Shown here one piece after another: positions 3,359-64,000 of a DNA stretch of 64,000 nucleotides. The notes under the pieces are model-generated. The model saw only the letters and a program-made list of their open reading frames with translations. It ran no database searches and had not been told where the DNA came from. This DNA comes from Ranitomeya imitator (taxonomy: Eukaryota), in contig NC_091284.1 of NCBI RefSeq assembly GCF_032444005.1, positions 826,522,001 to 826,586,000 of the forward strand, written 5' to 3'. The position numbers and the translations under genes were made by a program. Every line of letters begins with the position of its first letter. Within the stretch, counting starts at the first letter, position 1.

Positions 3359-3377
3359 CCGCCCTCGTCTCAGGATC

Positions 3378-35283: not shown

Positions 35284-35822
35284 CTATAAAAACTGGTGCA
35301 GTATTCTTTGGTGTCGCACGAGATTGGAGCTCTGAGAGAACCTACGTCCGCAGTGAGAGCACACGAACGGCCGCTCGCCAGTGTGGATGCGCTGGTGCTT
35401 GACGAGGCTGGATCTCTGGACAAAGCTGCGGGCGCATTCTGTGCAGTTAAAGGGCTTCTCTCCAGAATGGATCCGCTGATGAGTAACGAGCGCAGATCTC
35501 TCCGCAAAGCAGCGTCCGCACACTGGGCACGAGAACGGCTTCTCCCCCGTGTGCTTCCTCTTATGTGACAGAAGGCGAGAGCGCTGGCTGAAGGATTTGC
35601 CGCAGTAAGCGCAGGAATGGGGTTTCTCCTCGCTGTGGAATCGCTGGTGAGCGGCGAAAGCCGTCTCAGAACCGAAGTGAACTCCGCAGATGGAGCAGAA
35701 GAACAGGCTATCTGTACAGGGGGACTGCTGGCCGGGAGCGGGGTCCGAGGGATTTCGGACATGTCCTGGGGTCTGCAAACAATGGCGAATCATCACCGCA
35801 TCCAGTGAAGAGACGGTCGGAC
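35284..35822 (-). CDS. Terminal zinc-finger exon of the - strand ZNF gene
   Basis: ORF 35284-35841 has 5 tandem C2H2 fingers; acceptor ctcactgcag| at 35823. Confidence 0.93.
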
Positions 35823-38800
35823 CTGCAGTGAGCGAGATCAATGGTACACGGTCCCATCAGTGAGAACATGTAGAAGAAAGAAAAGCAGAATAAAGTAACA
35901 CTGTATAATCTACAGTATCCAATATACACATACTACACTGTGCTGCACTATTATATAATGGTATACTACTATATACAGTGGGTACAGAAAGTATTCACAC
36001 CCCTTTCAATTATTCACTCTTTGTTTCATTGCAGCCATTTGGTAAATTCTATAAAGTTCATTTTTTTCCTCATTAATGTTCACTCTGCATCCCATCTTGA
36101 GTGAAAAAACAGAAATGTAGAAATGTTTGCAAATAAAAAAAGAAAAACTGAAATATCCCATGGTCATAAGTCTTCAGCCCCTTTGCTCAGACACTCATAT
36201 GTAAGTCCCATGCTGTCCATTTCCTTGTGATCCTCCTTGAGATGGTTCTACTCCTTCATTGGAGTCCAGCTGTGTGTAACTAAACTGATAGGACTTGATT
36301 TGGAGCGGCGCACACCTGTCTATATAAGACCTCACAGCTCACAGTGCATGTCAGACCAAATGAGAATCATGAGGCCAAAGGAACTGGCCGAGGAGCTCAG
36401 AGACAGAATTGTGGCAAGGCACAGATCTGGCCAAGGTTACAGAATTTCTGTAGTACTCAAGGTTCCTAAGAGCACAGTGGCCTCCATAATCCTTAAATGG
36501 AAGAAGTTTGGGACCAGCAGAAGTCTTCATAGACCTGGCCGTCCAACCAAACTGAGCAACTGTGTATGACTGCATGCAGCTGCCCGGCCATAAAGCTCCT
36601 GGCGGGGCGCAGTGTTTGTGATGATACCAGAGGAGGTCTGGACTCTGCCGTTATGGGGTCAGCAGAGCGGTGGTGACGTTACGGGGTCTCCACTTGCTAC
36701 AGTTCCTTCAACTTCTCAGTAACAGCACTAACAAGAGATGGGGGAAGATTCAGGAGGAAGAAATGTAATGGTCGGACTTGTCACCCCGGTTGCTCCTATT
36801 ACAGGACCATGCTGGTATCAGGAGCTTTGCACCACCGGCCGCTCTGTCACATGTTAGTAAAGGCTGATGGCACGGTGGGGGGCACGGTGGGAGGGCCGGA
36901 GGTTATACATCGGGGGGGCGGCTGGTGTTGGATGTTATACATAGGAGCAAGGGACCAGATGTTGTACACCGGGGTTAATGGGGAATGAGGTCATACATCA
37001 GGGCCGAGGGGCCACATGTTGTACACTGGGGGGCAACTGGGCTGCGTTATACACCAGAGGCCGGATGTTATATATTGGGGGACAATTTGGCAGTAGCAAA
37101 CAAGAGAAATTCATTTGGTAGATGTGCGGCCCACCACTGTCCTCCATACGGTGTGTGCTGTAATTATAGAACACCACATAATAATATATGATATAATGTG
37201 CTATACTGCAATATAATGTACACTATGCAGTAATAATCCTGCACTATACGATCCTGTGCTCTGCCGCCATATACTGCACACTGCACAATACGGTGTTCCC
37301 TCTGTAATCATTACTATATGGATATACATCGGCCGCACGGTACTTATAGATCCCAAAACACAATGGCTGCCGCTCGTCTGACGTGACTTCCTTACCGGAG
37401 ATTATATAGTCAGGCGCGGCCTCCTCCTTACACGGCTGCTGACGGATCCAGTCGCTGACATCGGACTGTAATACAGGACCGCGGGTTAGAAGTGACGGCG
37501 GTATGCCGGGGTACAGAGTACATGATGTGACAGACTACCTGATCCTCCGGCGTCATCGCCTCATTATCCTCCTCTATGAAGTCGTCGGTACAGGCCGCCA
37601 TCGAGCAGTGATGGAGGCGATCCGCGGAATCCTCTCCACCTGCGCAAGATTAAAGGGGACCTCCAGCCAAAACTGAAAATCTGAACCCTCCGCCCCTCAC
37701 TCTCAGGCTTCAGTCTCCGGTGCAGGACATCGCCATCCAGCAGCAGCCAGTGTCGGCCATGTTGGTGTCTCCTCGTCAGCCAATCACAATGAATGAACAT
37801 TTTTGGTTTCATTTCCTTTCACTTTAGCCCCGTCCCACCCTGGGATGTACTTATTAAATTACAGGGTGGGTGCAGTGCGGCTGTCAGAATTGGATGACAA
37901 AAGGGCCCTGCTTTAAAAAAAAAAAAAGAAATCCGCACAGGCTGTGTAGGCCTCATTTATTTTAGTTGCCCATAGCAACCAATCAGAGAGCAGCTTTCAT
38001 TTCTTAAAAGGCTCTGGTAAAATGAAAGCTGAGCTGTGATTGGTTGCCATGGGCAACTAAGACAGATTTTCTCTTTATAAATCTGCCCCAATATATAAAT
38101 AATATATAGTGTCCGAGCTTCACAGGAGGACCAAGATGGCGGCCACTGGGGGTCTTTATCATGGAAACCCATCAGTTTAAAAGCTGTTGTCAGTAACCAG
38201 CTGCTTGATCATTCTCACACTTTCGTTTTCTTCCTCCCGATCTTCCGAGAGCCATCACTTTTTTATATTATTCCGGTGACATCGCCATATGAGGGCTTGT
38301 TTTTTAGCAGGACGATGAGTAATTTTGCATGTCACTATTTAATGTAATAAATTAAAAAAAAAAAAAAATCTGTAAAATTGTGAAAAAAAAAATTTCGCAA
38401 CTCCGTCAGTGTATTTTGGGTTTAGTTTTAATTGGCGTTTATTGTGGGTAAAAATAATCTGACATCATCATTATCCACGTCAGTGAGATTACGGCGAGGC
38501 GATACCAAAATTATATAAGTTTTTATTTTTTTCTAGAATTTAGTGGTGGGGAAAAAAAAAAAACCTTTAAAAGCAATTCTGGCATTTCCATTTTCTTTAC
38601 GGCTTGAATAATTTTATGTTATGATAGATCTCAATTTTACGGACGCGATGATAGCACATTTTTTATTTATTTTTTTTAACTAGGAAAAATCCAAAGGGGA
38701 GGAGTCAGTCTTTTATGTTTTACAATTTTTTATTTTTTTTTTATTTTTGGGGGGGACTTAACCCTGCGATTGTTTGATCACTTGTCTTATATAGTGTAAT

Positions 38801-41800
38801 ACTACAGTATAGCAGTGTGTAGTGATAATTGTACTCCCCTATGTCCCCAGCACACGTCTTGGCTTCACGGGAGTAGCAAGATGGCGGTTAAAGGGGTTGT
38901 TAATGGGCTGCCAATTTATCTGCAGTGGATGCCGGCTGTAAGACACAGCTCCTAGACCCGCACCCGAATGTCGGGGGGTTAAAGGTGGAAGTCGCTGGCG
39001 TCTCCCCTCGCAGTACCTAGACCACTGATACTATGATGGAGAACTCCTAGAACCATCCTGACCGGTAATCGGGTCATAGCGGTTATTGCCTTACCTGACC
39101 CGACGTCATCAGGAATGGCCGCCTCGTCCTCCTCCTTACACTGTTGAGGAAACATCCCATCCCCCGACGACTCGGCCTGCCATACACAAACAGTCATATT
39201 AGGACACCTTAAAGGGGTTGTCCATAAAGGGGCTAATTCCATGTAAATAAGATCTGACAGGTGCCGGATTATCGGATAATCCGGATTAATGTTCCTCGGA
39301 CTGTCGCCGATGCGGCCCATGTACCTGGCTCTCCTGCTGGTTGCAACACAGGGGGGTCCCACATTTTCTCAGGGGGCTTCCTGTACTAACTGCAGCTGCA
39401 GATAAAACAGTAACGAGAAACCGGAGGATCAATATTCAAGGATTAACCACAGTTTACATTTTTATTTAATCAATAGCACAGGGAAAAATACAATATTATC
39501 GGAGAAATCCACTTCTTTCTCCTCCTGCACTGATCATTTACTCTGAATTCTTGGGCACAATCTGCATTCAGTAGATTCTCCCATTACGGAGATGACAGTT
39601 GGTGCTCACAAGAGTCTATGGAGAGGGGAGGAGCTAGAAGCAGCGACCATCTGTTGCCAGCTCCATAGAACTTTATGAGAACCAACTGTCATCTCCTAAC
39701 TCCGTAATGTGAATCTGTTACAGTGAAGACACATTTTACCTGTGAACTGAGAATTTTAAGATTGAAAAATCAGTCCAGCAGGAGAAAAAAAAATCTAAAT
39801 TTCTCTGATGAGAAGTTTCTTATATTTGCACACACTATTGCGAGTTATGTAAAAAAAAAAAAAAATGACGGTTATTCTTTAATAGTAGCCGCCGCTGATC
39901 CCACTCAGCAGAGTTGATCACTCACCTGACACGTGATTTCCTATAGGGTCTGCACAGTCCGGCTCCAAAATTCTCTGATGATTTCGGGCAGAATCTTCTT
40001 GGGACAAAATGAAAAAGGTTTTTTTTTTTTGTTTGTTTTTTTTTAATTAACAAATGTACAACATCGTAATTGTTACTCATTTAACCCTTTAAAAAGAGAT
40101 GGCAATTTTTTCAACCATAGCTCCATAATCCCAAATTTTTCTTTTTCTTCCTACCTGCCTTCTGACTGATTCAGAGCCCGACCTTCACAGATGCCAAGTA
40201 ATTAACCAATCAATTAGTCGTTCAAACCATTCAGAAACTTTGAGGCCGTGTTCACTTTGCGTTTTTGCACCTTTTTTATGCATATTTTTAGCAGTGCTTT
40301 ATAGTACCAGCAAAGTCAATGAGATTTCAGAAATCTCCTGCACACACCTTGGTTTGTTTTCTGACTGTTTTGTCACAGGAGTTTGGAATTTGCAAAATGC
40401 AGCAGGTCAGTTTCAGTGTTTTTCACCCATTGAAAGCAATGGATAGTGCAAAAATATTGCAAAAACTAAGCAAAAAAAAAAAAAAACACAAGTGTTAGGT
40501 TTTGCTGCATTTTTGGTGCCAAAACCTTATGAAGTTGAATCAGGTTTTTTTTCCTTTTAATGCACTAAACTTTATCAGCATGCACAAGAGACAGTTGTAC
40601 CTTGACAAAAATGCAGGAAAAAAAAGGACAGCAAAGACAAAGCGAAAAAAGGCAACAAAGGCAAAGCGGAAAAAGGCAGCAAAAAAAGCAAAAAAAAGGC
40701 AACAAAGACAAAGCGGAAAAAGGCAGCAAAGACAAAGCGAAAAAAGGCAGCATAGACAAAGCGAAAAAAGGCAACAAAGACAAATCGAAAAAAGGCAACA
40801 AAGACAAAGCGGAAAAAGGCAGCAAAGACAAAGCGAAAAAAGGCAGCATAGACAAAGCGAAAAAAGGCAACAAAGACAAAGGGAAAAAAGGCAACAAAGA
40901 CAAAGCGGAAAAAGGCAGCATAAAAGCGAAAAATAGGCAACAAAGACAAAGCGGAAAAAGGCAGCAAAGACAAAGCGAAAAAAGGCAACAAAGACAAAGC
41001 GGAAAAAGGCAACAAAGACAAAGCGGAAAAAGGCAAACAAAGACAAAGCGGAAAAAGGTAAACAAAGACAAAGCGGAAAGAGGCAAAGACAAAGCGAAAA
41101 AAGGCAACAAAGACAAAGCAAAAAAGGGCAGCAAAGACAAAGCGGAAAAAGGCAGCAAAAACAGCGAAAAAAAGGCAAACAAAGACAAAGTGAAAAAGGT
41201 AACAAAGACAAAGCGAAAAAAGGCAACAAAGACAAAGCGGAAAAAAGCAAACAAAGACAAAGCGGAAAAAGGCAACAAAGACAAAGCGAAAAAAAGCAAC
41301 AAAGACAAAGCGGAAAAAGGCAAACAAAGACAAAGCAGAAAAAGGCAAAGACAAAGCGAAAAAAGGCAACAAAGATAAAGCGAAAGAAGGCAGCAAAGAC
41401 AAAGCGGAAAAAGTCAAACAAAGACAAAGCGGAAAAAGGCAGCAAAAAAAGCGAAAAAAAGGCAAACAAAGACAAAGTGAAAAAGGCAACAAAGACAAAG
41501 CGAAAAAAGGCAACAGAGACAAAGCGAAAAAAGGCAAGAAAGACAAAGCAGAAAAAGGCAGCAAAGACAGAGCGAAAAAAGGCAACAAAGACAAAGGGGA
41601 TAAAGGTAGCAAAGACAAAGTGGAAAAAGGCAGCAAAGACAAAGTGGAAAAAGGCAGCAAAGACAAAGTGGAAAAAGGCAGCAAAGACAAAGTGGAAAAA
41701 GGCAACAAAGACAAAGCGGAAAAAGGCAGCAAAGACAAAGCGGAAAAAGGCAGCAAAGACAAAGCAAAACCTGCTTTTTGTAAGCAGCTTTAACTTGACA

Positions 41801-44159: not shown

Positions 44160-46830
44160 CTTAAGGGATCTTTCCCCTGCGGCAACTGTAATGTGTGCCC
44201 CTATATGATTGCCACTGATCTACTAACGCTCTCGGTTTTTCCAGATGGAATTGAAAGGAGAATATATTCCAACTGCTGATCCAGGAATGTGATCTACCTA
44301 CTCATTTGTTCATGCCCGAAGATATATGTTGGACAAACAAGTCAGGAAGTCAGACGAAGGATTCAGCAACATATATCAAACATTGGCAAGGCTAAAGGGG
44401 ATACGGAAAAGGATAGACCTATTTCATCAGTCGCATCCTTTTTTTTGGAAAACCATGAGAGCCATGATTGTGGACCAAGTGTTGGGCGGTATTCGTGGTG
44501 GTGATTGTGGACCAAGTGTTGGGCGGTATTCGTGGTGGTGATTGTGGACCAAATGTTGGGCAGTATTTGTGGTGGTGATTGTGGACCAAGTGTTGGGCGG
44601 TATTCGTGGTGGTGATTGTGGACCAAATGTTGGGCAGTATTTGTGGTGGTGATTGTGGACCAAGTGTTGGGCGGTATTCGTGGTGGTGATTGTGGACCAA
44701 GTGTTGGGCGGTATTCGTGGTGGTGACTGTGGACCAAGTGTTGGGCGGTATTCGTGGTGGTGATTGTGGACCAAGTGTTGGGCGGTATTCGTGGTGGTGA
44801 TTGTGGACCAAGTGTTGGGCGGTATTCGTGGTGGTGATTGTGGACCAAGTGTTGGGCGGTATTCGTGATGGTGATTGTGGACCAAGTGTTGGGCGCTATT
44901 CGTGGTGGTGATTGTGGACCAAGTGTTGGGCGGTATTCGTGGTGGTGATTGTGGACCAAGTGTTGGGCGCTATTCGTGGTGGTGATTGTGGACCAAGTGT
45001 TGGGCGGTATTCGTGGTGGTGATTGTGGACCAAGTGTTGGGCGGTATTCGTGGTGGTGATTGTGGACCAAGTGTTGGGCGGTATTCGTGATGGTGATTGT
45101 GGACCAAGTGTTGGGCGGTATTCGTGGTGGTGATTGTGGACCAAGTGTTGGGCGGTATTCGTGGTGGTGATTGTGGACCAAGTGTTGGGCGGTATTCGTG
45201 GTGGTGATTGTGGACCAAGTGTTGGGCGGTATTCGTGGTGGTGACTGTGGACCAAATGTTGGGCGGTATTTGTGGTGGTGATTGTGGACCAAGTGTTGGG
45301 CGGTATTTGTGGTGGTGATTGTGGACCAAGTGTTGGGCGGTATTCGTGGTGGTGATTGTGGACCAAGTGTTGGGCGGTATTCGTGGTGGTGACTGTGGAC
45401 CAAGTGTTGGGCGGTATTCGTGGTGGTGATTGTGGACCAAGTGTTGGGCGGTATTCGTGATGGTGATTGTGGACCAAGTGTTGGGCGCTATTCGTGGTGG
45501 TGATTGTGGACCAAGTGTTGGGCGGTATTCGTGGTGGTGATTGTGGACCAAGTGTTGGGCGCTATTCATGGTGGTGATTGTGGACCAAGTGTTGGGCGGT
45601 ATTCGTGGTGGTGATTGTGGACCAAGTGTTGGGCGGTATTCGTGGTGGTGATTGTGGACCAAGTGTTGGGCGGTATTCGTGGTGGTGATTGTGGACCAAG
45701 TGTTGGGCGGTATTCGTGATGGTGATTGTGGACCAAGTGTTGGGCGGTATTCGTGGTGGTGACTGTGGACCAAATGTTGGGCAGTATTTGTGGTGGTGAT
45801 TGTGGACCAAGTGTTGGGCGGTATTTGTGGTGGTGATTGTGGACCAAGTGTTGGGCGGTATTCGTGGTGGTGATTGTGGACCAAGTGTTGGGCGGTATTC
45901 GTGGTGGTGACTGTGGACCAAGTGTTGGGCGGTATTCGTGGTGGTGATTGTGGACCAAGTGTTGGGCGGTATTCGTGATGGTGATTGTGGACCAAGTGTT
46001 GGGCGCTATTCGTGGTGGTGATTGTGGACCAAGTGTTGGGCGGTATTCGTGGTGGTGATTGTGGACCAAGTGTTGGGCGCTATTCGTGGTGGTGATTGTG
46101 GACCAAGTGTTGGGCGGTATTCGTGGTGGTGATTGTGGACCAAGTGTTGGGCGGTATTCGTGGTGGTGATTGTGGACCAAGTGTTGGGCGGTATTCGTGA
46201 TGGTGATTGTGGACCAAGTGTTGGGCGCTATTTGTGGTGGTGATTGTGGACCAAGTGTTGGGCGGTATTCGTGGTGGTGATTGTGGACCAAGTGTTGGGC
46301 GGTATTCGTGGTGGTGATTGTGGACCAAGTGTTGGGCGGTATTTGTGGTGGTGATTGTGGACCAAGTGTTGGGCGGTATTTGTGGTGGTGATTGTGGACC
46401 AAGTGTTGGGCGGTATTCGTGGTGGTGATTGTGGACCAAGTGTTGGGCGGTATTCGTGGTGGTGACTGTGGACCAAGTGTTGGGCGGTATTCGTGGTGGT
46501 GATTGTGGACCAAGTGTTGGGCGGTATTCGTGGTGTTGACTGTGGACCAAGTGTTGGGCGGTATTCGTGGTGGTGATTGTGGACCAAGTGTTGGGCGGTA
46601 TTCGTGGTGGTGATTGTGGACCAAGTGTTGGGCGGTATTCGTGGTGGTGACTGTGGACCAAGTGTTGGGCGGTATTCGTGGTGGTGACTGTGGACCAAGT
46701 GTTGGGCGGTATTCGTGGTGGTGACCAGACTAAGGAACTACTACTACGTCGGGAATCCCGCTGGATCTTCGATTTGAATAGCACGTCACCTAATGGACTC
46801 CACGAGGAGCTTCTTTTCTCTGGGTTCTAC
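44160..46830 (+). mobile_element. Penelope-like element 3' fragment (GIY-YIG endonuclease) split by a minisatellite
   Basis: GSFPCGNCNVC...NVIYLLICSCPKIYVGQT..RRRIQQHISNI lies before the array; LLLRRESRWIFDLNSTSPNGL follows it. Confidence 0.85.
44466..46723. repeat. 37-bp minisatellite (~61 copies)
   Basis: Unit GTGGTGGTGATTGTGGACCAAGTGTTGGGCGGTATTC, very homogeneous. Confidence 0.97.
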
Positions 46831-49820: not shown

Positions 49821-52800
49821 TGTATCACTTTTTGTGAAAGCGAAAAATGACAATTTGGATGTTTAGATATTTTTTTTCTTCACATTTTCTATAAATTGAA
49901 TTGAAATTTCCTTAGATTTTGCCAATTCTAGTGATCGTTATGTCACGCGCACTGCGCCTTATGCATCCTGCTGTGAGATCCGTCAGCAGCAGCTTGCTGA
50001 CGGTTTCCCGGTCGGGAGGGATTTCATTATCCTGCTCAGATTAGAGTAAAAAAACAAAAAAAATAATCAATGTAGATTCTAAAACTGCCGGATTTTCGGT
50101 CACTGACTACAGAGCCCCTTTTAATCCCCCCGTGTACATTTGTTTGGGGGGTCCAGGTACCGGAAGTGGGCACTGAAGTATCATCCGCTGAAAAATAAGG
50201 AGCCGTCCGCTCCGCACCGATTCTGCCAGATCGCCGAGGCCTACGATGTTCTCAGTGACCGTGAGTAAACCTGTGCCGCCTTCTCACAGCGGAGGGTTTG
50301 TTACAGTGGGACACAGCAGGAGACATGTTACCTGCGCCGATACATTGTCACAAACTACCAGGACAGGACGCCGATGATGCGTTTAGGATACAACGGTAAC
50401 AAACCTTCAGCTGCGAGTAATATCCGCGCGTGTTCACATGTGGAGTCTGCTGAATGTTGTGGTGAAGAGGCGACATGTCCCCCGTCCCCTCCTGTACTCA
50501 TCCTCCCTCGTCTCTGAGCAGCCAGGAAGAAGGCGACTTACGATAAGTTCGGAGAGGAGGGTCTGAAGGGCGGGATCCCGGCAGAATTCGGGGGTCCGGA
50601 CGCCTGGACATCGGGGTACGTGTATCACGGGAATCCGGACAAGACCTTCAAGGAGTTTTTTGGGGGAGATAATCCATTTGCAGGTAAGATCCGGTGACGG
50701 GTTGATCTGGCGGTGGGAGGGGGGTTGTGGATCGGGACCCCCCAGACCAGACACGTGATGGGGTCCTGGACCGGCCTCTTATCATTTGGGGCGCTCGTTG
50801 CACCCAGAATACAATTCGTCTCTGGTTTCTGTGAATTCCCGCCATCGGCTCAGGCGTTTCATTGTGTTTCTGCTCCAGACTTTTTCTCACCAGACGGGTC
50901 TGAAGTCAATACAGGATTTGGGGGTCTGCGAGGAAGAGGAGTGAAGAAACAGGACCCCCCGATCGAGCGAGATCTCTACGTCTCCCTGGAGGACTTGTAT
51001 TTTGGATGCATAAAGAAAATCAAAATTTCACGAAGGGTAAGAGGCGTCCTCCGGACTTGTGTAAAAAAATCTGCACGTTATACTGGATCATTATTACCCG
51101 CTCCTTCCCTCAGACCTCCAGGACACGGCACCTGCTCCCTCCCTCAAACCCTCAAGTCCCGGTACCTGCTTCCTCACTCTTTCCCTCAGGATCAGGCACC
51201 TGCTCCCTTCCTCAGACCCCCAGGACCGGGCACCTGCTGTCTCCCTCAAACACCACAGAGCGGGCACCTGCTCCCTCTCTCAGACCTCCCCGGAGGGGGC
51301 ACCTGCTCCCTCCCTCAGACGCCCAGGATCAGGCACCTGTGCTCTCCCTCAGACCTCCAGGATCAGGCACCTGCTCCCTCCCTCAGACCTCCAGGATCAG
51401 GCACCTGCTCCCTCCCTCAGACGCCCAGGATCAGGCACCTGCTTCCTCCCTCAGACCTCCAGGACAGGGCACCTGCTCTCTCCCTCAAGCCCCCCGAAGT
51501 GGACCCCTGCTCCGTCCCTCAGACCTCCAGGACTGAGCATCTGCTCTCTCCCTCAGACCCCGCAGAGCGGGCACCTGCTTCCTTCCTCAGACCCCCAGGA
51601 CAGGGCACTTGCTCCCTCTCTCAGACCACCCCGGAGGGGGCACCTGCTCCCTCCCTCAGACCCCCAGGATCAGGCACCTGCTCCATCCCTCAGACCCCTA
51701 GAACCAAGCATCTGCTCTCTCCCTCAGACCCCGCAGAGCGGGCACCTGCTTCCTTCCTCAGACCCCCAGGACAGGGCACCTGCTCCCTCCCTGAAGCCCC
51801 TCGGAGCGGGCACCTGCTCCTTCCCTCCCTCCCTCAGGCCCCCAGGTCCCGGCACCTGCTTCCTCACTCTGACTCCCAGTTCAGGCACCTGCTCCCTCCC
51901 TCAGACCTCCTGGACAGGGCACCTGCTCCCTCCCTCAGATCCCCAGGATAGGGCACCTACTTCCTCCCTCAGACCTCCTGGACAGGGCACCTGCTCCCTC
52001 CCTCAGACCTCCTGGACAGGGCACCTACTTCCTCCCTCAGATCCCCAGGATAGGGCACCTACTTCCTCCCTCAGACCTCCAGGATCAGGCACCTGCTCCC
52101 TCCCTCAGACGCCCAGGATCAGGCACCTGCTCCCTCCCTCAGACGCCCAGGATCAGGCACCTGCTTCCTCCCTCAGGGCTCCTGCTCTCTCCCTCAAGCC
52201 CCCCGAAGTGGACCCCTGCTCCGTCCCTCAGACCTCCAGGACTGAGCATCTGCTCTCTCCCTCAGACCCCGCAGAGCGGGCACCTGCTTCCTTCCTCAGA
52301 CCCCCAGGACAGGGCACTTGCTCCCTCTCTCAGACCTCCCCGGAGGGGGCACCTGCTCCCTCCCTCAGACCCCCAGGATCAGGCACTTGCTCCATCCCTC
52401 AGACCCCTAGAACCAAGCATCTGCTCTCTCCCTCAGACCCCGCAGAGCGGGCACCTGCTTCCTTCCTCAGACTCCCAGGACAGGGCACCTGCTCCCTCCC
52501 TGAAGCCCCTCGGAGCGGGCACCTGCTCCTTCCCTCCCTCCCTCAGGCCCCCAGGTCCCGGCACCTGCTTCCTCACTCTGACTCCCAGTTCAGGCACCTG
52601 CTCCCTCCCTCAGACCTCCTGGACAGGGCACCTGCTCCCTCCCTCAGATCCCCAGGATAGGGCACCTACTTCCTCCCTCAGACCTCCTGGACAGGGCACC
52701 TGCTCCCTCCCTCAGATCCCCAGGATAGGGCACCTACTTCCTCCCTCAGATCCCCAGGATAGGGCACCTACTTCCGCCCTCAGACCTCCAGGACAGGGCA

Positions 52801-55800
52801 CCTGCTCCCTCCCTCAGACCCCCAGGATAGGGCAACTGCTCCCTCCCTCAGACCCCCAGGATAGGGCACCTGCTCCCTCCCTCAGATCCCCAGGATAGGG
52901 CACCTGCTCCCTCCCTCAGATCCCCAGGATAGGGCACCTACTTCCTCCCTCAGACCTCCTGGACAGGGCACCTGCTCCCTCCCTCAGACCTCCTGGACAG
53001 GGCACCTGCTCCCTCCCTCAGATCCCCAGGATAGGGCACCTACTTCCTCCCTCAGACCTCCTGGACAGGGCACCTGCTCCCTCCCTCAGACCTCCTGGAC
53101 AGGGCACCTACTTCCTCCCTCAGATCCCCAGGATAGGGCACCTACTTCCTCCCTCAGACCTCCAGGATAGGGCACCTACTTCCTCCCTCAGACCTCCAGG
53201 ACAGGGCACCTGCTCCCTCCCTCAGACCCCCAGGATAGGGCACCTGCTCCCTCCCTCAGACCCCCAGGATAGGGCACCTGCTCCCTCCCTCAGATCCCCA
53301 GGATAGGGCACCTACTTCCTCCCTCAGATCCCCAGGATAGGGCACCTACTTCCTCCCTCAGACCTCCAGGACAGGGCACCTGCTCCCTCCCTCAGACCCC
53401 CAGGATAGGGCACCTGCTCCCTCCCTCAGACCCCCAGGATAGGGCACCTGCTCCCTCCCTCAGACCCCCAGGATAGGGCACCTGCTCCCTCCCTCAGATC
53501 CCCAGGATAGGGCACCTGCTCCCTCCCTCAGATCCCCAGGATAGGGCACCTACTTCCTCCCTCAGATCCCCAGGATAGGGCACCTACTTCCTCCCTCAGA
53601 CCTCCAGGACAGGGCACCTGCTCCCTCCCTCAGACCCCCAGGATAGGGCACCTGCTCCCTCCCTCAGACCCCCAGGATAGGGCACCTGCTCCCTCCCTCA
53701 GATCCCCAGGATAGGGCACCTGCTCCCTCCCTCAGATCCCCAGGATAGGGCACCTACTTCCTCCCTCAGATCCCCAGGATAGGGCACCTGCTCCCTCCCT
53801 CAGACCCCCAGGATAGGGCACCTGCTCCCTCCCTCAGATCCCCAGGATAGGGCACCTGCTCCCTCCCTCAGACGTCCAGGACATGGCACCTGCTCCCTCC
53901 CTCAGACCCCCAGGATAGGGCACCTGCTCCCTCCCTCAGACCCCCAGGATAGGGCACCTGCTCCCTCCCTCAGATCCCCAGGATAGGGCACCTGCTCCCT
54001 CCCTCAGACCCCCAGGATAGGGCACCTGCTCCCTCCCTCAGACCCCCAGGATAGGGCACCTGCTCCCTCCCTCAGATCCCCAGGATAGGGCACCTACTTC
54101 CTCCCTCAGATCCCCAGGATAGGGCACCTGCTCCCTCCCTCAGACCCCCAGGATAGGGCACCTGCTCCCTCCCTCAGATCCCCAGGATAGGGCACCTGCT
54201 CCCTCCCTCAGACCCCCAGGATAGGGCGCCTACTTCCTCCCTCAGACCTCCAGGACAGGGCACCTGCTCCCTCCTTTAGACCCCCAGGATAGGGCACCTG
54301 CTCCCTCCCTCAGACCCCCAGGACCAGGTACCCGCTCCTCCCTCAGATCCCCAGTATTAGGCACCTGCTAGCTCCCTAAGACCCCCAGGACTGGGCACTT
54401 GCTCCCTCAGACCCCCAGTATTAGGCACCTGCTAGCTCACTAAGACCTCCCGAACTGGGCATCTGCTCCATCCTTCAGACCCCCAGGACCGAGCACATTC
54501 TCCCTCAGACCCCCAGGACCGAGCACGTTCTCCCTCAGACCCCCAGGAGCGGGTTATGGCTGTATGGACACATATATAACACGTATCTCTGTGACCGCAG
54601 GTAATGAATGAAGACGGCCACACATCCAGCATACGAGATAAGATCCTCTCCATAGACGTCCATCCTGGATGGAAAGCGGGCACCAGGGTCACGTTCCCCA
54701 AAGAGGGCGACCAGGTCACAAGCAGCCGCTTCTCCCATAATTTATGCCGATTGTCTCTTTAAGAAATAATATAATATGTTATTCTGTGTTTAGGGCCCGA
54801 ACATCGTCCCCACGGACATCGTGTTTATCGTGAAGGAGAAGCCCCACCCCCGCTTTACACGACAGGACGACGATTTGATCCACACAGCGAACATCGAACT
54901 TAGCAAAGTAAGAAAAAAGAGAAATGTGTGAGCACCGGTGCGATCTGTAACCTGCGCTGCACCGCCAGCGCCGAGGAGGAGGAGCTGCAGACATCACGCT
55001 CGCTCTGGGGTCGCCATAGTGGTGACAACAAAGTATTCAGATGAACTTCCTGTCATGTGACCAGAAGTCATCAGACAGGATTCTGTTCATGTCACCATGG
55101 CGACCCCAGAGCGAGCATGATCATATAAACCGCAGCATGAGAGGAGAAAACAATGATGGTGCGTACCAGAGACGGGTGTCAGACTGTGACCAGACCGCAC
55201 TGCGGACGCTGTCACTAGTGGACCGGACACCTGCTATGGAGCCCTGGCTGCGTCCTCTGCTCTATGTACCATGTGTATGCCGGAATCAATGGTGACAGTG
55301 ACGACAGGAGCTCTGGGGGGGGAGACCCTAAAGGGGATGATGCACGGACGAGTGCTCTCTCCTGAAGGATCATCCTATCATCCTTGTGTCACTAGTCCCA
55401 GCACGAGCTCCTCCAGGCTGCCACATCCCTACCTGCCCCCACGGGAAGGTGCGCTGTGCCCCCCAGCACCGTCTCAGGGGAGCAGAAATCAGGACATGGG
55501 TCCTTACACCAGGAGAGACGGACAGGGACATAGACTGGAGGAACAAAGCGAGCTCGGCCAAACAGGGCACCTGCTCCTCCCTCAGACCCCCCAGGACAGT
55601 GCATCTGCACCTTCACTCAGACCCCCAGGATCAGGCACCTGCTCCCTCCCTCAGACCCCCAGGATCAGGCACCTGCTTCCTCCCTCAGCCCCCCCAGGAC
55701 CGTGCATCTGCACCTTCACTCAGACCCCCAGGATCAGGCACCTGCTCCCTCCCTCAGACCCCGAGGATCAAGCACCTGCTCCCTCCCTCAGACCCCCAGG

Positions 55801-58629
55801 ATCAGGCACCTGCTCCCTCCCTCAGACCCCCCAGGACAGTGCATCTGCACCTTCACTCAGACCCCCAGGATTGGGCACCTGCTCCCTTCCTCAGACCCCA
55901 AGGATCAGGCACCTGCTCCCTCCCTCAGACCCCCCAGGACAGTGCATCTGCACCTTCACTCAGACCCCCAGGATCAGGCACCTTCTCCCTCCCTCAGCCC
56001 CCCCAGGACCGTGCATCTGCACCTTCACTCAGACCCCCAGGATCAGGCACCTGCTCCCTCCCTCAGACCCCCCAGGACAGTGCATCTGCACCTTCACTCA
56101 GACCCCCGGGATTGGGCACCTGCTCCCTTCCTCAGACCCCCGGGATCAGGCACCTGCTCCCTCCCTCAGACCCCCAGGACCAGGCACCTGCTCCCTCCAT
56201 CAGACCCCCCAGGACAGTGCATCTGCACCTTCACTCAGACCCCCAGGATTGGGCACCTGCTCCCTTCCTCAGACCCCAAGGACCAGGCACCTGCTCCCTC
56301 CCTCAGACCCCCCAGGACAGTGCATCTGCAACTTCACTCAGACTCCCAAGATTGGGCACCTGCTCCCTTCCTCAGACCCCCAAGATCAGGCACCTGCTCC
56401 CTCCCTCAGACCCCCAGGATCAGGCACCTGCTCCCTCCCTCAGACCCCCCAGGACAGTGCATCTGCACGTTCACTCAGACCCCCAGGATTGGGCACCTGC
56501 TCCCTTCCTCAGAGCCCCAGGACCAGGCACCTGCTCCCTTCCTCAGACCCCAAGGATCAGGCACCTGCTCCCTCCCTCAGACCCCCCAGGACAGTGCATC
56601 TGCACCTTCACTCAGACCCCCAGAATCAGGCACCTGCTCCCTCCCTCAGACCCCCCAGGACAGTGCATCTGCACCTTCACTCAGACCCCCAGGATTGGGC
56701 ACCTGCTCCCTTCCTCAGACCCGCAGGATCAGGCACCTGCTCCCTCCCTCAGCCCCCCAGGACCGTGCATCTGCACCTTCACTCTGACCCTCAGGATCGG
56801 GCATGAGCTTCCTCCCTCAGACCCCCAGGATCAGGCACCTGCTCCCTCCCTCAGACCCCCAGGATCAGGCACCTGCTCCCTCCCTCAGACCCCCCAGGAC
56901 AGTGCATCTGCACCTTCACTCAGACCCCCAGGATTGGGCACCTGCTCCCTCCCTCAGACCCCCAGGATCAGGCACCTGCTCCCTCCCTCAGACCCCCCAG
57001 GACAGTGCATCTGCACCTTCACTCAGACCCCCAGGATCAGGCACCTACTCCCTCCCTCAGACCCCCCAGGACAGTGCATCTGCACCTTCACTCAGACCCC
57101 CAGGATCAGGCACCTGCTCCCTCCCTCAGACCCCCCAGGACAGTGCATCTGCACCTTCACTCAGACCCCCAGGATTGGGCACCTGCTCCCTCCCTCAGAC
57201 CCCCCAGGACAGTGCATCTGCACCTTCACTCAGACCCCCAGGATTGGGCACCTGCTCCCTCCCTCAGACCCCCCAGGACAGTGCATCTGCACCTTCCTCA
57301 GACCCGCAGGATCAGGCACCTGCTCCCTCCCTCAGCCCCCCCAGGACCGTGCATCTGCACCTTCACTCAGACCCCCAGGATCGGGCATGAGCTCCCTCCC
57401 TCAGACCCCCAGGATCAGGCACCTGCTCCCTCCCTCAGACCCCCCAGGACCGTGCATCTGCACCTTCACTCAGACCCTCAGGATCGGGCATGAGCTCCCT
57501 CCCTCAGACCCCCAGGATCAGGCACCTGCTCCCTCCCTCAGACCCCCAGGATCAGGCACCTGCTCCCTCTCTCAGACCTCCAGGATCAGGCACCTGCTCC
57601 CTCCCTCAGACCCCCAGGATCAGGCACCTGCTCCCTTCCTCAGACCCCCAGGATCAGGCACCTGCTCCCTCTCTCAGACCCCCAGGATCAGGCACCTGCT
57701 CCCTCCCTCAGACCCCCAGGATCAGGCACCTGCTCCCTTCCTCAGACCCCCAGGATCGGGCATGAGCTCCCTCCCTCAGACCCCCAGGACTCTAGGAGGG
57801 TCGCACAAACCTCCACATGATGCCAGCGGTGTCCTGACTGCTGCTCGGTGCCGGGATGATTCCTCAGAGCCATTGTCAGACCTTACTCTTTGGCCCGGGG
57901 TGACTCGGAGTTCGTCCCTCGTTTTTTTGATGAGTTTGGATTTTCATTCACCGCTGTGGCAAATTACAATTACCGCTATTTGTATCAGGAAATGTTGTCC
58001 GCCTGGGGCCGGGGCTTGGTGGCGTCACGGCTGGTGCAAACAAAGATTGCTAAGTATGGCAGCTACATCACAGCCCAGCACAAGTGAACGCCGTCACACT
58101 ACAACCAACCAAGTCCGATTTTTTGCCAAGTCTCCGTCTACCCGAAGCCTGAATCTTCCATTTATCAACATCTGATATATTGTCTCCTTATTTTTATTTT
58201 CTGAGCAGTACCTCATCCTGCCCAGCAGGAGGCGACACTTGACCCTTCACATCTTGTATTTTGCAGGCGCTGACAGGCTGCACGGTGGAAGTGGAAACGT
58301 TGGATGACCGAATATTAAACATTCCCATCAATGACATCGTACAGTAAGTCATTAACCCCTTGTGTCACCTGGAGGAAGGGGCGCAACCCCTGTGATTTCT
58401 GATTGTGGGGGGCATCTTGTCATGTCCCCTATGTGGTTATTAGGTTAATGACACAATTATGTTCTTCTCCAACAGCCCCAAATACAGTAAAGTGGTCCCC
58501 GGGGAGGGGATGCGGACGTCCTGCGACCCCACCGTGAAGGGCGACCTCATTATCCAGTTCGATATCCAGTTTCCAGAACACCTGACGCCAGAGAAGAAGC
58601 AGCTGCTCCGGAAAGCCCTGCTGTCCTGA
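49650..58629 (+). CDS. DNAJB13: DnaJ homolog subfamily B member 13 (radial-spoke HSP40), 316 aa
   Basis: Exons 49650-49717 ([14 protein letters not shown]), 50157-50260 (YHPL J-domain variant), 50522-50683, 50879-51036, 54601-54714, 54794-54907, 58267-58343, 58476-58629 total 951 nt. Length and motifs ([46 protein letters not shown]) match DNAJB13 as I recall the orthologue. Confidence 0.96.
51100..54548. repeat. 34-bp C-rich minisatellite in DNAJB13 intron 4
   Basis: Unit CACCTGCTCCCTCCCTCAGACCCCCAGGATAGGG; period of 34 (53411 to 53445). Confidence 0.96.
55562..57788. repeat. Related 34-bp minisatellite with alternating subunits in DNAJB13 intron 6
   Basis: CACCTGCTCCCTCCCTCAGACCCCCAGGATCAGG alternates with a CAGTGCATCTGCACCTTCACTCAGACCCC variant. 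Confidence 0.96.
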
Positions 58630-58675: not shown

Positions 58676-58681
58676 AATAAA
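58676..58681 (+). terminator. Polyadenylation signal of DNAJB13
   Basis: AATAAA 47 nt after the TGA stop. Confidence 0.6.
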
Positions 58682-58924
58682 GAAACTTCAGACACCAGAA
58701 TCTCCAGTCTGAATATCTTCTAAGCGGGACTCTTCTCCCTGCAGAGAGTGCCAAACCTGTGTAAGGAGACTAATAGGCCGTGCAATGCTTCTCTGGGAAT
58801 TTTAATATGCAAATTGCCTCTTCAGAATGAAGAGGACTAGATCTCTGGTGCCTCCTGTGGGATGTAGCAATCCTAAATATCGACCCTTTAACGAGTCACA
58901 GGACTTAGGATAGAAGCCAAAACA

Positions 58925-59074
58925 GAAACTCCATTTACAGACACGTGTTTCAGGGTGTTTGCCCCTCATCAGTGCAAACTCCAGTCAAAGGTTTCTCATA
59001 CAGCAAAATCAGATCTCTTGCTTTGCACTGATGAGGGGCAACACCCCGAAACACACATCTGCAAATGGAGTTTC
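58925..59074. ncRNA. Inverted pair of minimal type-I hammerhead ribozyme motifs
   Basis: Plus copy 59022-59065: TTTGCA-CTGATGA-GGGG CAACA CCCC-GAAA-CACACA-TC-TGCAAA. Minus copy 58978-58934: TTTGCA-CTGATGA-GGGG CAAACA CCCT-GAAA-CACGTG-TC-TGTAAA. Confidence 0.8.
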
Positions 59075-59647
59075 CGTGATTAGATGATAATTGCAGTTTT
59101 GGCCCAACACCATTTTTGTGCAGAGATCCTTAATTTCACTGTATACTACAGCACTGGATTATAGCATGAAGGAGAGCATTGGGGTGGCAGTATGGAGATA
59201 AGGAGAGTGTGAAGTGTTGACCATAGTTCATAAGGGAGGGCAGTGTGGAGGTAATACTCAATAGGAGAGGGCAGTGTAGAGGTCACAGTTTGTGCAAGGA
59301 GCCCAGCGAGGGGAATCATTTATTCAGGAGCACAGCGTAGGGTTTATTTAGGGCACAGTATTGGGTAGTTATTTTTATTTAAAGGGCCATATAATGACTC
59401 TGTTAATTTTAAGGGGATGACGTGCTGCAGAGAACAATATTTAAGCAACCTTAAAAATTGTTTCACCCGACTAACAAACGTGCATCGGATGATTGACAGA
59501 CTGTTCAGACAGGCTGATATTTGGTTCTTGATTATTGGCCAGTGTAAATGCACCTTAAAGAATAAATAAACTTTTGGGAGATTTTTTTTACTGTTTTAGG
59601 TACTTTATTTATAAACAGTTCGGTGTGGGTCCAGGTCCTGAGAGTAA

Positions 59648-61790: not shown

Positions 61791-62330
61791 CTCCATTATC
61801 TTGATAGTATCTTACTTGTTTTCCTATTTACCTTGATTCTTCTATTCTTCCGACCATGATGTCTTTCTCCAGTGATCACTTTCTTCATATGATGTGTCCA
61901 AAGTAGGCAAGTCATAACCTGGTGATCCCTGCTTTGAATGACATGTCTGGCTTGATTTGTTCCAAGTTTGTTCTTCTTGCCATCCATGGTGTTAACATCC
62001 TTCTCCTTTACCACATTTTGAAAGGCGTCGATTCTTCTTATGACTTGTTTCGTCATCGTCCAGGTTTCACATCCGTACGTTACTTAAGAAAAGACCAAAC
62101 TATGTATGAGCCTTGTCTTCTTTGCCAGTAAAATGTTCCTCTATTTGAAGACCTCGTCTAGTGACTTTATTGTTGATTTCCCCAGAACTATTCTCCTATT
62201 CACTTCATGTGTTGTCGCTGCATCATTCTTATGAATATGTTGAAGTTCTTACATCTTCCAGTTTGTCATTGTCCATCTCGTACCTGGCAGTAGTCAATAC
62301 CTTTGTCTTCTTTGCATTAAGTAGCAGTCC
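61790..62330 (-). mobile_element. RTE-clade LINE 3' fragment
   Basis: RRIDAF.. and the adjoining sequence are the reverse complement of the 63440-64000 copy. Confidence 0.75.
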
Positions 62331-63439: not shown

Positions 63440-64000
63440 TTTATGGTCCATTCAAGGGAGGAAAGTTATTGACTACTACCAGGTACAATCAGTATACATG
63501 AGATGGCCGACGACAAACTGGAAGTTGTAAGGGACTTCAACCTAATCGGATCAATAATCCCTCAAGAAGATGCAACAACGACACCAGAGGAAAATAGGAG
63601 AATAGTTCTGGGCAAATCAACAATGAAGACACCGGGCAAGGTCTTCAAATCGATGAACATTTCACTCATACATAGTTCATTCTTTTCTGTGATAACTTAC
63701 AGTTGTGAAACCTGGACGATAAAGAAACAAGACAGAAGAATTGACGCCTTTGAAATGTGGAGCTGGAGGAGTATGTTATCAATACCATGGGTGGCAAGAA
63801 GAACTAAATTTTTGAAAAAATGATGCCAGACATGTCACTCGAAACAATGATCACCAAGCTATGACTTCCCTACTTTGGACACATCATATGAAGACCACAA
63901 ACACTGGAGAAGGACATCATGGTTGGAGGAAAGGAAGGAACAAGACGAAGAGGAAGACCAGCAATCCGATGGCTTGATGCTATCAAGATACCTGTGGAAA
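63440..64000 (+). mobile_element. RTE-clade (BovB/RTE-1-like) LINE RT C-terminal fragment
   Basis: LEVVRDF..GS.I...RRIVLGK...ITYSCETWTIKK..RRIDAFEMWSWR.ML.IPW.ARRT, followed by YFGHI and RRRGRP..RWLD-type motifs. Confidence 0.88.

What the first reader, a model, noticed from the sequence alone, without database searches (positions are those of the whole stretch)
58925..59074. Divergent inverted pair of hammerhead ribozymes just downstream of the DNAJB13 poly(A) site
Seen: a 150-bp palindrome whose arms each carry the hammerhead core (CUGAUGA...GAAA...UC) with stem I (UUUGCA/UGYAAA) and a 4-bp stem II. Known: minimal type-I hammerheads with a palindromic stem-III loop are typical of Penelope-like elements and amphibian satellite/retrozyme RNAs, and often cleave as dimers. 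The two copies have different defects. The minus copy keeps GUC and the palindromic ACACGUGU but has a G-U pair at the base of stem II; the plus copy has a perfect stem II but AUC and a broken stem III. Inference: this may be a self-complementary non-autonomous ribozyme element. Read-through DNAJB13 RNA would contain the plus copy ~350 nt after AATAAA, either free to cleave or masked by the hairpin, which suggests a possible termination aid.
Basis: partly seen in the sequence, partly recalled or inferred. Interest (0 to 1): 0.8.

Follow-up and report, generated by a model that had tools for sequence, protein, structure and literature searches.

The report
Decayed inverted hammerhead ribozyme relic
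A 156-bp palindrome about 220 bp past the likely poly(A) site of a DnaJ-family gene carries two outward-facing hammerhead ribozyme motifs, but it is most likely a decaying leftover of a Penelope-like/retrozyme retroelement insertion, a known and common kind, and not a device for ending the gene's transcript.

Summary
Window 58922-59077 is an imperfect palindrome with 57- and 56-nt arms and a 43-nt spacer. Each arm is a 44-45-nt type-I hammerhead (HHR) plus a 12-nt 3' tail, and both ribozymes read outward from the centre. A strict HHR descriptor hits only these two sites in 128 kb and none in 200 shuffled windows. The minus arm aligns end to end with Rfam Hammerhead_1 but below its threshold (24.6 vs 34 bits). 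The plus arm gets only a partial Hammerhead_3 match.

The PLE/retrozyme affinity fits published descriptions: short palindromic helix III, activity as dimers, thousands of copies in amphibian and fish genomes, and dual motifs on opposite strands. The arms differ by six transitions (three at CpG sites) and one indel, with no compensating change. This looks like neutral decay of one canonical ancestor.

The termination idea is not supported. The gene-sense (plus) copy has lost helix III, and on either strand the sense ribozyme pairs with its antisense arm at every nascent length tested. I found no second copy, target-site duplication or PLE ORF in the window. A genome-wide census was not possible. 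This is a new member of a known kind and of low interest.

The parts
58922..58933 (-). 12-nt 3' tail of the minus copy (UGGAGUUUCUGU on the minus strand), the outer end of the left arm
   Evidence: Homology between the arms ends here. No significant extension was found with gapped alignment.
58934..58978 (-). Minus-strand type-I hammerhead motif, 45 nt. Helix I 5' strand 58978-58973; CUGAUGA 58972-58966; helix II GGGG 58965-58962, loop CAAACA 58961-58956, CCCU 58955-58952 (G10.1-U11.1 wobble); GAAA 58951-48; CACGUG 58947-42; U16.1 C17 58941-40, with the predicted cleavage site 3' of 58940; helix I 3' strand 58939-58934.
   Evidence: Full-length match to RF00163 at 24.6 bits, below the gathering score of 34. 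Descriptor hit. All 13 pairs are standard in alignment A1. The homodimer MFE is a double hammerhead.
58979..59021 (.). 43-nt non-palindromic spacer, which forms the loop of the hairpin
   Evidence: No self-complementarity beyond AGATCT. It is either upstream sequence of one 5'-truncated copy or filler. This cannot be resolved without a family consensus.
59022..59065 (+). Plus-strand degenerate type-I hammerhead motif, 44 nt. Helix I 59022-27 / 59060-65 (perfect); CUGAUGA 59028-34; helix II GGGG 59035-38, loop CAACA 59039-43, CCCC 59044-47; GAAA 59048-51; CACACA 59052-57 (helix III broken, palindrome lost); U16.1 C17 59058-59.
   Evidence: Descriptor hit. Only a partial RF00008 match at 14.2 bits and no Hammerhead_1 match. 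The only two unpaired cells of alignment A1 are in this arm's helix III.
59066..59077 (+). 12-nt 3' tail of the plus copy (UGGAGUUUCCGU), the outer end of the right arm
58475..58629 (+). Context: last coding exon of a DnaJ_C-containing gene (DNAJB13-like), stop TGA at 58627-58629
   Evidence: Pfam DnaJ_C profile positions 121-152. Homologues P0001 and P0002 carry PF01556. The exon start, after the AG at 58473-58474, is read from the sequence.
58676..58681 (+). Context: first AATAAA after the stop codon, about 240 nt upstream of the palindrome. The next + strand AATAAA is at 59561.

Best explanation
The palindrome is a decayed relic of one old retroelement insertion made by Penelope-like-element (PLE) machinery. 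The source was either a PLE itself or one of the non-autonomous 'retrozyme' derivatives that share its hammerhead-bearing terminal region.

Two severely 5'-truncated cDNA copies of the element's 3' end were laid down head to head, each a hammerhead plus 12 more nucleotides. The 3' ends therefore face outward and the truncated 5' ends meet at the 43-nt spacer. This is the layout expected when a PLE enzyme nicks and extends both DNA strands.

Both arms then drifted by ordinary mutation, mostly loss of methylated CpG. Each ribozyme picked up different uncompensated defects. At this locus neither ribozyme is expected to cleave. In any transcript crossing it, the sense ribozyme is locked in a long hairpin of about 57 bp with its antisense arm. 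The element has no role in ending the DnaJ gene's transcript.

Shown: the motifs, their orientation, the substitution pattern and the thermodynamic masking. Inferred: the PLE origin and the both-strand priming mechanism.
For: 1. Both arms are type-I hammerheads with the architecture published for metazoan PLE/retrozyme ribozymes.
- Only two descriptor hits in 128 kb, and 0 in 200 shuffles.
- Full-length RF00163 alignment of the minus arm.
- 96.9% of cells are paired when the arms are aligned with a metagenomic HHR (L005) and the coral and mussel retrozyme HHRs, the coral one shown to self-cleave in vitro. 10 of 13 pairs covary (sequences from the PMC7229834 supplement).

2. Both ribozymes read outward, with 5' ends at the centre. 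This matches the published PLE layout.
- Craig et al. 2021 (PMC8557442) describe PLE insertions as highly 5'-truncated. They often have an inverted 5'-truncated copy adjacent, forming inverted repeats, and the HHR lies near the 3' end.
- Frangieh et al. 2024 (PMC11167929) show that a PLE protein cleaves and extends both top and bottom strands and uses uncleaved RNA.
- Cervera & de la Pena 2014 (PMC4209133) already noted dual HHRs about 100-700 bp apart on opposite strands, and most motifs as lone truncated copies. They count about 9,000 in Xenopus tropicalis.

3. Both arms extend 18 nt past the predicted cleavage site. The RNA templates were therefore uncleaved at that site (direct reading), which agrees.

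4. The arms differ by 6 substitutions, all transitions, 3 of them at CpG sites, plus 1 indel (K2P 0.12). The changes hit 11.1, helix III and helix I without compensation. Choosing the CpG state at each difference gives an ancestor with G10.1-C11.1, GUC and ACACGUGU, which is a fully canonical ribozyme.

5. Masking. The hairpin is -82 and -103.5 kcal/mol. Ribozyme stem I/II pair probabilities are 1e-15 or lower in 600-nt transcripts of either strand. In nascent-transcript MFEs the sense HHR pairs with the antisense arm from about 14-20 nt onward and has 0 intra-ribozyme pairs.

6. A genomic contig of a distant orthologue (L002, 67% aa identity in the last exon) has no such element in the 341 nt after its stop codon. 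This is weak evidence.
Against: - No PLE ORF is nearby. No RT or GIY-YIG domain was found in the ten ORFs tested by Pfam out to 63159, and a further ORF at 63503-63820 gave no Pfam family.
- No second copy of the arm or any other hammerhead is in the 64-kb window.
- No target-site duplication and no recognisable 30-40-bp PLE 'tail'.
- Homology to a PLE pLTR or retrozyme consensus could not be tested, because no eukaryotic genome or repeat library is reachable with these tools. Metagenome, viral and protein-word searches found no same-family copy.
- The arms' homology stops exactly at the 5' edge of helix I. For two random truncation points that is a mild coincidence.
- The inner 20 nt are identical while the rest has 7 differences (p about 0.04 for that placement). 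This could hint at constraint or gene conversion.
- Thermodynamic masking is a prediction and was not measured.
Confidence: 0.62

Rival explanations
1. The whole 156-bp palindrome is a mobile unit of its own. It would be a foldback or MITE-like non-autonomous element whose terminal inverted repeats are hammerheads.
For: 57-nt terminal inverted repeats with a short unique loop give a compact, sharply bounded unit. The arms begin exactly at the helix I boundary.
Against: No target-site duplication. No second copy in 64 kb. I found no such element class in the hammerhead/PLE papers read. The outward 3' ends are explained more simply by known PLE insertion behaviour.
Confidence: 0.12
2. A single hammerhead-bearing fragment inserted first, and was later duplicated in inverted orientation by a replication or repair template switch. 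Transposition chemistry would then play no part in the palindrome.
For: Short inverted duplications with a spacer are a common product of fork template switching (general knowledge). The lack of a TSD and of PLE hallmarks is compatible with this.
Against: It needs an extra event. The duplicated block coincides exactly with the ribozyme plus 12 nt, and PLE both-strand priming explains that directly.
Confidence: 0.12
3. The hairpin itself has been co-opted. In read-through or long-3'UTR RNA of the DnaJ gene it would act as a substrate for Drosha/Dicer-type processing (small RNAs) or as a structured pause that helps Pol II termination. Ribozyme chemistry would not be involved.
For: A very stable hairpin lies about 220 nt past the likely poly(A) site, and the next AATAAA is at 59561, so a longer isoform would include it. 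The 2026 preprint notes that exon-overlapping retrozymes lie mostly in 3' UTRs.
Against: No Rfam miRNA family matches; the mir-745 hit has E = 0.52 and 17.7 bits against a gathering score of 62. The arms show unconstrained transition decay. There is no expression data, and the element is absent from L002.
Confidence: 0.07
4. One reading: the plus-strand hammerhead self-cleaves read-through DnaJ pre-mRNA and gives an entry point for exonuclease-driven termination.
For: The position is 346 nt after AATAAA, on the gene's strand. The core nucleotides and helices I and II of the plus copy are intact.
Against: The plus copy has lost helix III beyond A15.1-U16.1 and the palindrome needed for dimer activity, and it fails Hammerhead_1. 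No second sense copy is in cis. The ribozyme is paired with the antisense arm throughout simulated transcription. Metazoan HHRs of this type are already poor monomeric cleavers in vitro (PMC4209133, PMC7229834).
Confidence: 0.03

Closest known systems
Type-I hammerhead ribozymes of Penelope-like element pLTRs and their scattered truncated copies (Cervera & de la Pena 2014, PMC4209133)
   Same: CUGAUGA/GAAA core, open helix I, and a helix III reduced to 1-3 bp with a palindromic centre that implies dimeric action. Most occur as lone, PLE-less copies, sometimes as pairs on opposite strands about 100-700 bp apart. They are abundant in amphibian, fish and reptile genomes.
   Different: The PLE 'min-HHRs' typically have a longer helix II (6-8 bp), a shorter helix I and a bulged base before 10.1. 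This motif has the 'canonical' 6-bp helix I and 4-bp helix II, with loop CAAACA. The two copies here are only 43 nt apart and form a tight palindrome. No PLE ORF is nearby.
Metazoan non-LTR retrozymes / amphibian satellite-2-type HHR repeats (Cervera & de la Pena 2020, PMC7229834; Li, Clavereau & Pollet 2026 preprint)
   Same: Canonical type-I HHR with 6-bp helix I, 4-bp helix II and a palindromic helix III. Vertebrate versions cleave well only as dimers. A weakened pair at the base of helix II is known (U-U in axolotl HHR_Amex2). Monomeric derivatives are scattered through genomes, and those overlapping exons lie mostly in 3' UTRs.
   Different: Retrozymes are head-to-tail tandem repeats of about 50-970 bp. 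Here the two copies are head to head, each is cut down to about 57 nt, and no tandem partner exists on either strand.
Inverted 5'-truncated copy architecture of PLE insertions (Craig et al. 2021, PMC8557442; Frangieh et al. 2024, PMC11167929)
   Same: Two copies of the same 3'-terminal region in inverted orientation, with 3' ends outward and truncated 5' ends inward. The HHR is close to the 3' end. The template RNA was not cleaved at the HHR.
   Different: In described cases one of the two copies is usually long (pLTR-ORF-pLTR). Here both are about 57 nt. No 30-40-bp tail was recognised. The distance from the cleavage site to the 3' end is 18 nt, against roughly 85-90 nt inferred for the Anolis element.
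Rfam RF00163 Hammerhead_1
   Same: The minus arm aligns over all 45 model positions with every modelled pair standard, and loop II CAAACA matches the consensus CAAAUA.
   Different: The score of 24.6 bits is below the gathering score of 34. The plus arm does not match this model at all.

Membership tests
Hammerhead ribozyme, type I (canonical metazoan form; Rfam RF00163) | Conserved core: C3 U4 G5 A6 N7 G8 A9, G12 A13 A14, A15.1-U16.1, H17 | tested here: met
   Both arms carry CUGAUGA ... GAAA ... UC with C17. These columns are invariant in alignment A1.
Hammerhead ribozyme, type I (canonical metazoan form; Rfam RF00163) | Helices I (open), II and III in the right order with standard pairs | tested here: inconclusive
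   In the minus arm all 13 scored pairs are standard. In the plus arm helices I and II are perfect, but 2 of the 3 helix III pairs are broken.
Hammerhead ribozyme, type I (canonical metazoan form; Rfam RF00163) | G10.1-C11.1 closing pair of helix II | tested here: inconclusive
   The plus arm has G-C. The minus arm has a G-U wobble from a C->T change at a CpG. Natural amphibian HHRs with a weak pair here are reported (PMC7229834).
Hammerhead ribozyme, type I (canonical metazoan form; Rfam RF00163) | Score at or above the family's curated gathering threshold | tested here: not met
   The whole window gives no hit at gathering. The minus arm scores 24.6 bits against 34. The plus arm has no Hammerhead_1 hit.
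Hammerhead ribozyme, type I (canonical metazoan form; Rfam RF00163) | Self-cleavage 3' of position 17 | not testable with these tools
   This needs in vitro transcription or in vivo RNA end mapping. In silico, only the minus-arm homodimer adopts a cleavage-competent double-hammerhead fold.
Penelope-like element (PLE) insertion | RT plus GIY-YIG endonuclease ORF flanked by pLTRs | tested here: not met
   No RVT or GIY-YIG domain in the downstream ORFs tested: ten out to 63159 and one at 63503-63820. A DnaJ gene lies upstream. The only RT in the window belongs to a gypsy element at 24001-29823. Truncated PLE relics usually lack the ORF, so this does not exclude PLE origin.
Penelope-like element (PLE) insertion | Inverted 5'-truncated copies with 3' ends outward and the HHR near the 3' end | tested here: met
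   Both HHRs read outward, with 12 nt beyond helix I, and their 5' ends abut the spacer. The layout is described in PMC8557442.
Penelope-like element (PLE) insertion | Sequence homology to a PLE pLTR or retrozyme consensus of the same genome; multicopy family | not testable with these tools
   No eukaryotic genome or repeat library is available. There are no further copies in the window. Metagenome, viral and protein-word searches gave nothing of the same family.
Non-LTR retrozyme | Head-to-tail tandem repeats, each unit carrying a type-I HHR | tested here: not met
   The two copies are inverted, not tandem, and there is one sense copy per strand. The locus could still be a monomer-derived relic of such a family.
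MITE / foldback DNA element | Terminal inverted repeats flanked by a target-site duplication, in many copies | tested here: not met
   TIR-like arms are present, but the flanks share no direct repeat above chance (p = 0.93) and there is no other copy in the window. Copy number in the genome was not testable.
Ribozyme-assisted (co-transcriptional cleavage) terminator | A cleavage-competent ribozyme fold accessible in the gene's own nascent transcript | tested here: not met
   The plus copy lacks helix III. At every nascent length from 14 nt onward the ribozyme is paired to the antisense arm. Stem probabilities are 1e-15 or lower. This is a prediction only.

The most novel reading that the evidence does not exclude
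The 156-bp palindrome is not a dead relic. It would be a unit under selection. One form would be a new class of hammerhead-bearing foldback element that transposes as a whole, with its hairpin gating ribozyme activity. The other form would be an exapted structured element in the termination zone or long 3' UTR of the DnaJ gene, acting as a small-RNA source or pause site. The identical inner 20 bp of the arms would then reflect constraint and not chance.
Probability: 0.07. Interest if true: 0.55.

Novelty: new member of a known kind. Interest (0 to 1): 0.2.

Why it matters
As it stands this is one more of the thousands of hammerhead relics that PLEs and retrozymes leave in non-mammalian, non-avian vertebrate genomes. 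It is useful mainly for annotation.

It is a compact illustration of three published points. PLE-type insertions can leave inverted twin copies. The templates are uncleaved at the ribozyme. The ribozymes decay neutrally once inserted.

It also shows a practical limit of annotation pipelines. Rfam gathering thresholds miss these short-helix-III hammerheads, so searches at those thresholds will not flag them.

Had the termination idea held, it would have been a natural ribozyme terminator in a vertebrate gene. The evidence here argues against that.

Tried and rejected
1. Rfam at gathering thresholds on the whole window gave nothing. A 401-nt E-value search missed the minus arm because of the filters. 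Only 75-nt searches exposed the Hammerhead_1 match.

2. Other copies in the window: blastn with word size 7, the strict descriptor and a covariance model with filters off found none.

3. Same-family copies elsewhere:
- The exact 20-mer in metagenome and viral contigs gave 0 hits.
- A degenerate core pattern gave 3 + 2 loci, all unrelated hammerheads. Several look like phage-type motifs. One, L005, is a type-I motif with similar helix II and III.

4. A protein-word search with the 55-aa ORF that starts at the AUG inside CUGAUGA of the minus arm found no candidates.

5. Orthologous loci: the last-exon search found two Logan contigs at 67% identity. They carry only 115 and 341 nt of downstream DNA and no palindrome. 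They are too distant and too short to serve as an empty-site test. The window's own ORF is not on record.

6. Target-site duplication and arm extension: local alignments of the flanks are no better than shuffles. An apparent TTAGGATAGAA / TTAGATGATAA similarity and a TTTTGGC match beyond a 20-nt gap were rejected as chance.

7. A 50-nt periodicity (AAACTCCA at 58926 and 58976) suggested a tiny tandem unit. One repeated 8-mer in 200 nt is expected about 0.3 times by chance, and the flanks do not continue the period. I dropped it.

8. Literature sequence-string searches for this ribozyme's helix II and III returned only unrelated primers. Supplements of three of the four HHR/PLE papers held no usable sequences. 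The supplement of PMC7229834 gave the coral and mussel HHRs.

9. The mir-745, snoRNA and other weak Rfam hits are far below threshold and are driven by the UGAUGA box or the hairpin shape.

10. A three-sequence independent covariance model was abandoned because MAFFT misaligned helix II.

Full report
**What is there**

Window 58922-59077 is an imperfect palindrome. The arms are 58922-58978 and 59022-59077, and they flank a 43-nt non-palindromic spacer. The inner 20 nt of the arms are perfectly complementary. With one gap the arms are 50/57 identical. As RNA the region folds into one long hairpin: -82 kcal/mol on the + strand and -103.5 on the - strand, z = -11 and -15 against dinucleotide shuffles.

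Read 5'->3' on its own strand, each arm is UUUGCA-CUGAUGA-GGGG-(CAACA/CAAACA)-CCC(C/U)-GAAA-(CACACA/CACGUG)-UC-UG(C/U)AAA, followed by UGGAGUUUC(C/U)GU. That is a 44-45-nt type-I hammerhead plus a 12-nt tail. Both ribozymes read outward from the centre of the palindrome.

**Is it more than chance?**

I wrote a descriptor requiring all of the following:
- 6/6 helix I pairs
- CUGANGA
- a helix II of at least 4 bp
- GAAA
- 0-10 nt of helix III insert
- U followed by a non-G

It finds exactly these two sites on both strands of the 64-kb window, and none in 200 first-order Markov shuffles of the window.

Rfam gives a mixed answer:
- Nothing in the window reaches any family's gathering score.
- With the search space reduced to 75 nt, the minus arm aligns with Hammerhead_1 (RF00163) over the whole model (1-45/45). 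Every modelled pair is standard, and loop II CAAACA matches the consensus CAAAUA. The score is 24.6 bits against a gathering score of 34, E = 1.6e-4.
- The plus arm gets only a partial Hammerhead_3 match covering the core and helix II, at 14.2 bits.

I aligned the two arms with a metagenomic type-I motif (L005) and with the coral and mussel retrozyme ribozymes, the coral one shown to self-cleave in vitro (sequences from the supplement of PMC7229834). In that alignment 96.9% of pair cells are standard, against 70% in shuffles. Ten of 13 pairs change on both sides. The only two unpaired cells are in the plus arm's helix III. So the motifs are genuine hammerhead-family sequences: one nearly intact, one degenerate.

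**How the two copies differ**

Over 56 aligned positions there are six substitutions and one single-base indel in loop II, giving K2P = 0.12. All six substitutions are transitions. Three sit at CpG dinucleotides:
- C11.1-G12: CG in plus, TG in minus
- the centre of helix III: CG in minus, CA in plus
- the tail: CG in plus, TG in minus

None is compensated. They produce the G-U at the base of helix II in the minus copy, a G-U in its helix I, and the loss of two helix III pairs and of the palindrome in the plus copy.

Taking the CpG state as ancestral gives a fully canonical ribozyme with G10.1-C11.1, GUC and ACACGUGU. This is the signature of two copies of one active-type sequence decaying neutrally, not of selection on either ribozyme.

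The one oddity is that all seven differences avoid the inner 20 nt (p about 0.04 for that placement). I treat this as weak. It could be chance, gene conversion near the hairpin loop, or constraint.

**Can either ribozyme act here?**

Ribozymes of this architecture have a one- to three-pair helix III. They are reported to cleave poorly as monomers and to work as dimers formed through the palindromic helix III (PMC4209133; PMC7229834).

In silico, two minus copies do fold as a double hammerhead with an 8-bp ACACGUGU helix at -25.3 kcal/mol. But there is no second sense copy on either strand anywhere in the window.

More importantly, on either strand the antisense arm is transcribed first and the sense ribozyme second.
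- In 600-nt transcripts the pair probabilities of ribozyme helices I and II are 1e-15 to 1e-36.
- In MFE structures of growing transcripts, the ribozyme is paired with the antisense arm from about 14-20 nt onward and has no intra-ribozyme pairs at any length.

These are thermodynamic predictions, not measurements.

**Surroundings**

A + strand gene with DnaJ_C-domain exons ends at TGA 58627-58629. Pfam pieces lie at about 50962-51045, 54634-54717 and 58477-58575. The first AATAAA is at 58676 and the next at 59561. Calling the gene DNAJB13 specifically rests on my memory of that protein's C-terminus.

The palindrome starts about 240 nt after the AATAAA, about 220 nt past the likely poly(A) site.
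- ORFs downstream to 63.8 kb: ten tested by Pfam and one more at 63503-63820 show no reverse transcriptase or GIY-YIG domain.
- There is no tRNA-like sequence and no compositional break.
- The flanks share no direct repeat above chance, and the arms cannot be extended.

**What it most likely is**

Published work describes what is seen here:
- Type-I hammerheads sit in the terminal repeats of Penelope-like elements and are scattered in thousands of mostly lone, truncated copies in fish, coelacanth, amphibian and reptile genomes. There are about 9,000 in Xenopus tropicalis, and some dual motifs lie close together on opposite strands (PMC4209133).
- PLE insertions are highly 5'-truncated. They often carry an inverted 5'-truncated copy that creates inverted repeats, and the ribozyme lies near the 3' end (PMC8557442).
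- A purified PLE protein nicks and extends both DNA strands and uses RNA that is not cleaved at the ribozyme (PMC11167929).
- Vertebrate retrozymes are non-autonomous PLE derivatives. Their monomeric copies are dispersed, and those overlapping exons lie mainly in 3' UTRs (bioRxiv 10.64898/2026.07.22.740005).

The locus fits this picture:
- The 3' ends face outward and the truncated 5' ends face inward.
- Both copies run 18 nt past the cleavage site, so the templates were uncleaved there.
- The ribozyme has the canonical metazoan shape.

I therefore read it as a relic of a single PLE-machinery insertion primed on both strands, long since decayed.

The shown parts are the motifs, the orientation, the decay pattern and the masking. 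The PLE origin and the priming mechanism are inferred, because I could not reach the source genome or a repeat library. Searches of metagenomic and viral contigs and a protein-word search for the ORF starting at the AUG of CUGAUGA found no same-family copy.

**Rivals**

- A self-contained foldback/MITE-like hammerhead element is not excluded. It lacks a TSD and a second copy (confidence 0.12).
- A later inverted duplication of a single fragment is possible but needs an extra event (0.12).
- Co-option of the hairpin itself as a small-RNA source or pause site has no support beyond position and stability (0.07).
- Ribozyme-assisted termination of the DnaJ transcript is contradicted by the broken helix III of the only sense-strand copy and by the masking (0.03).

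A distant orthologue contig (L002) has no such element in the 341 nt after its stop codon. It is too divergent to count for much.

**Verdict**

The hammerhead and PLE/retrozyme affinity is supported. The functional speculation is not. This is a new member of a known and very abundant kind, so interest is low (0.2). The decisive missing piece is a genome-wide census plus an orthologous empty site, which these tools cannot provide.

Noticed in passing
window 51096-57790: A 6.7-kb GC-rich minisatellite (34-nt unit, about 195 copies, with higher-order periods of 69 and 103 nt) fills the introns between DnaJ_C exons. It creates spurious ORFs of up to 929 aa in several frames.
   Followed up: partly
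window 1747-3360; 3968-8033; 32293-33699; 40620-41769; 44465-46724: Five more large minisatellite arrays: 28 nt x58, 30/60 nt x64-115, 33 nt x43, 24 nt x48 and 37 nt x61. About a quarter of the window is tandem repeat, which explains most of the long 'ORFs' in the window.
   Followed up: partly
window 24001-29823 (-): A young Ty3/gypsy LTR retrotransposon. It has 814-bp LTRs that are 98% identical (24001-24813 and 29012-29823). A 1033-aa ORF carries gag, protease, RT, RNase H and the integrase zinc domain, and downstream ORFs carry the integrase SH3 and chromodomain. It is inserted inside a 34-nt minisatellite (23713-24001 / 29823-30160).
   Followed up: partly
window 10249-11115 (+) and 35284-35841 (-): Two C2H2 zinc-finger ORFs. 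The first has 5 fingers by Pfam. The second was read by eye only and has several HTGEKPF linkers.
   Followed up: partly
window 36237-36569 (+): Fragment of a Tc1/Sleeping Beauty-type transposase (HTH_SB domain, E = 9e-22).
   Followed up: partly
window 63503-63823 (+) and 61796-62056 (-): Short ORFs containing '...RRIDAFEMWSWRSMLSIPW...' and '...RRIDAFQ...'. From memory they resemble the C-terminal part of LINE (RTE/BovB-like) reverse transcriptases. Pfam gave no hit, so this is unverified.
   Followed up: partly
window 59159-59283: Three loosely similar 30-nt direct repeats (63-80% identity) lie about 80 nt downstream of the palindrome. No relation to the hammerhead arms was found.
   Followed up: no
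L005:148-192 (+) (JGI metagenome contig JGI26657J51804_10022808): A type-I hammerhead motif with nearly the same helix II, loop and helix III as the window's minus arm (CUGAUGA-GGGGCAAUAACCCC-GAAA-CACGUG-UA). It has a different helix I (GCACUG/CAGUGC) and A17. It is presumably from a eukaryote in that sample.
   Followed up: partly
L004:899-926 = L007:899-926; L006:13471-13498 (-): Hammerhead core matches on large phage-like contigs (IMG/VR). A closed hairpin precedes CUGAUGA, so they look like the phage-type hammerheads. They are unrelated to the window's element.
   Followed up: no
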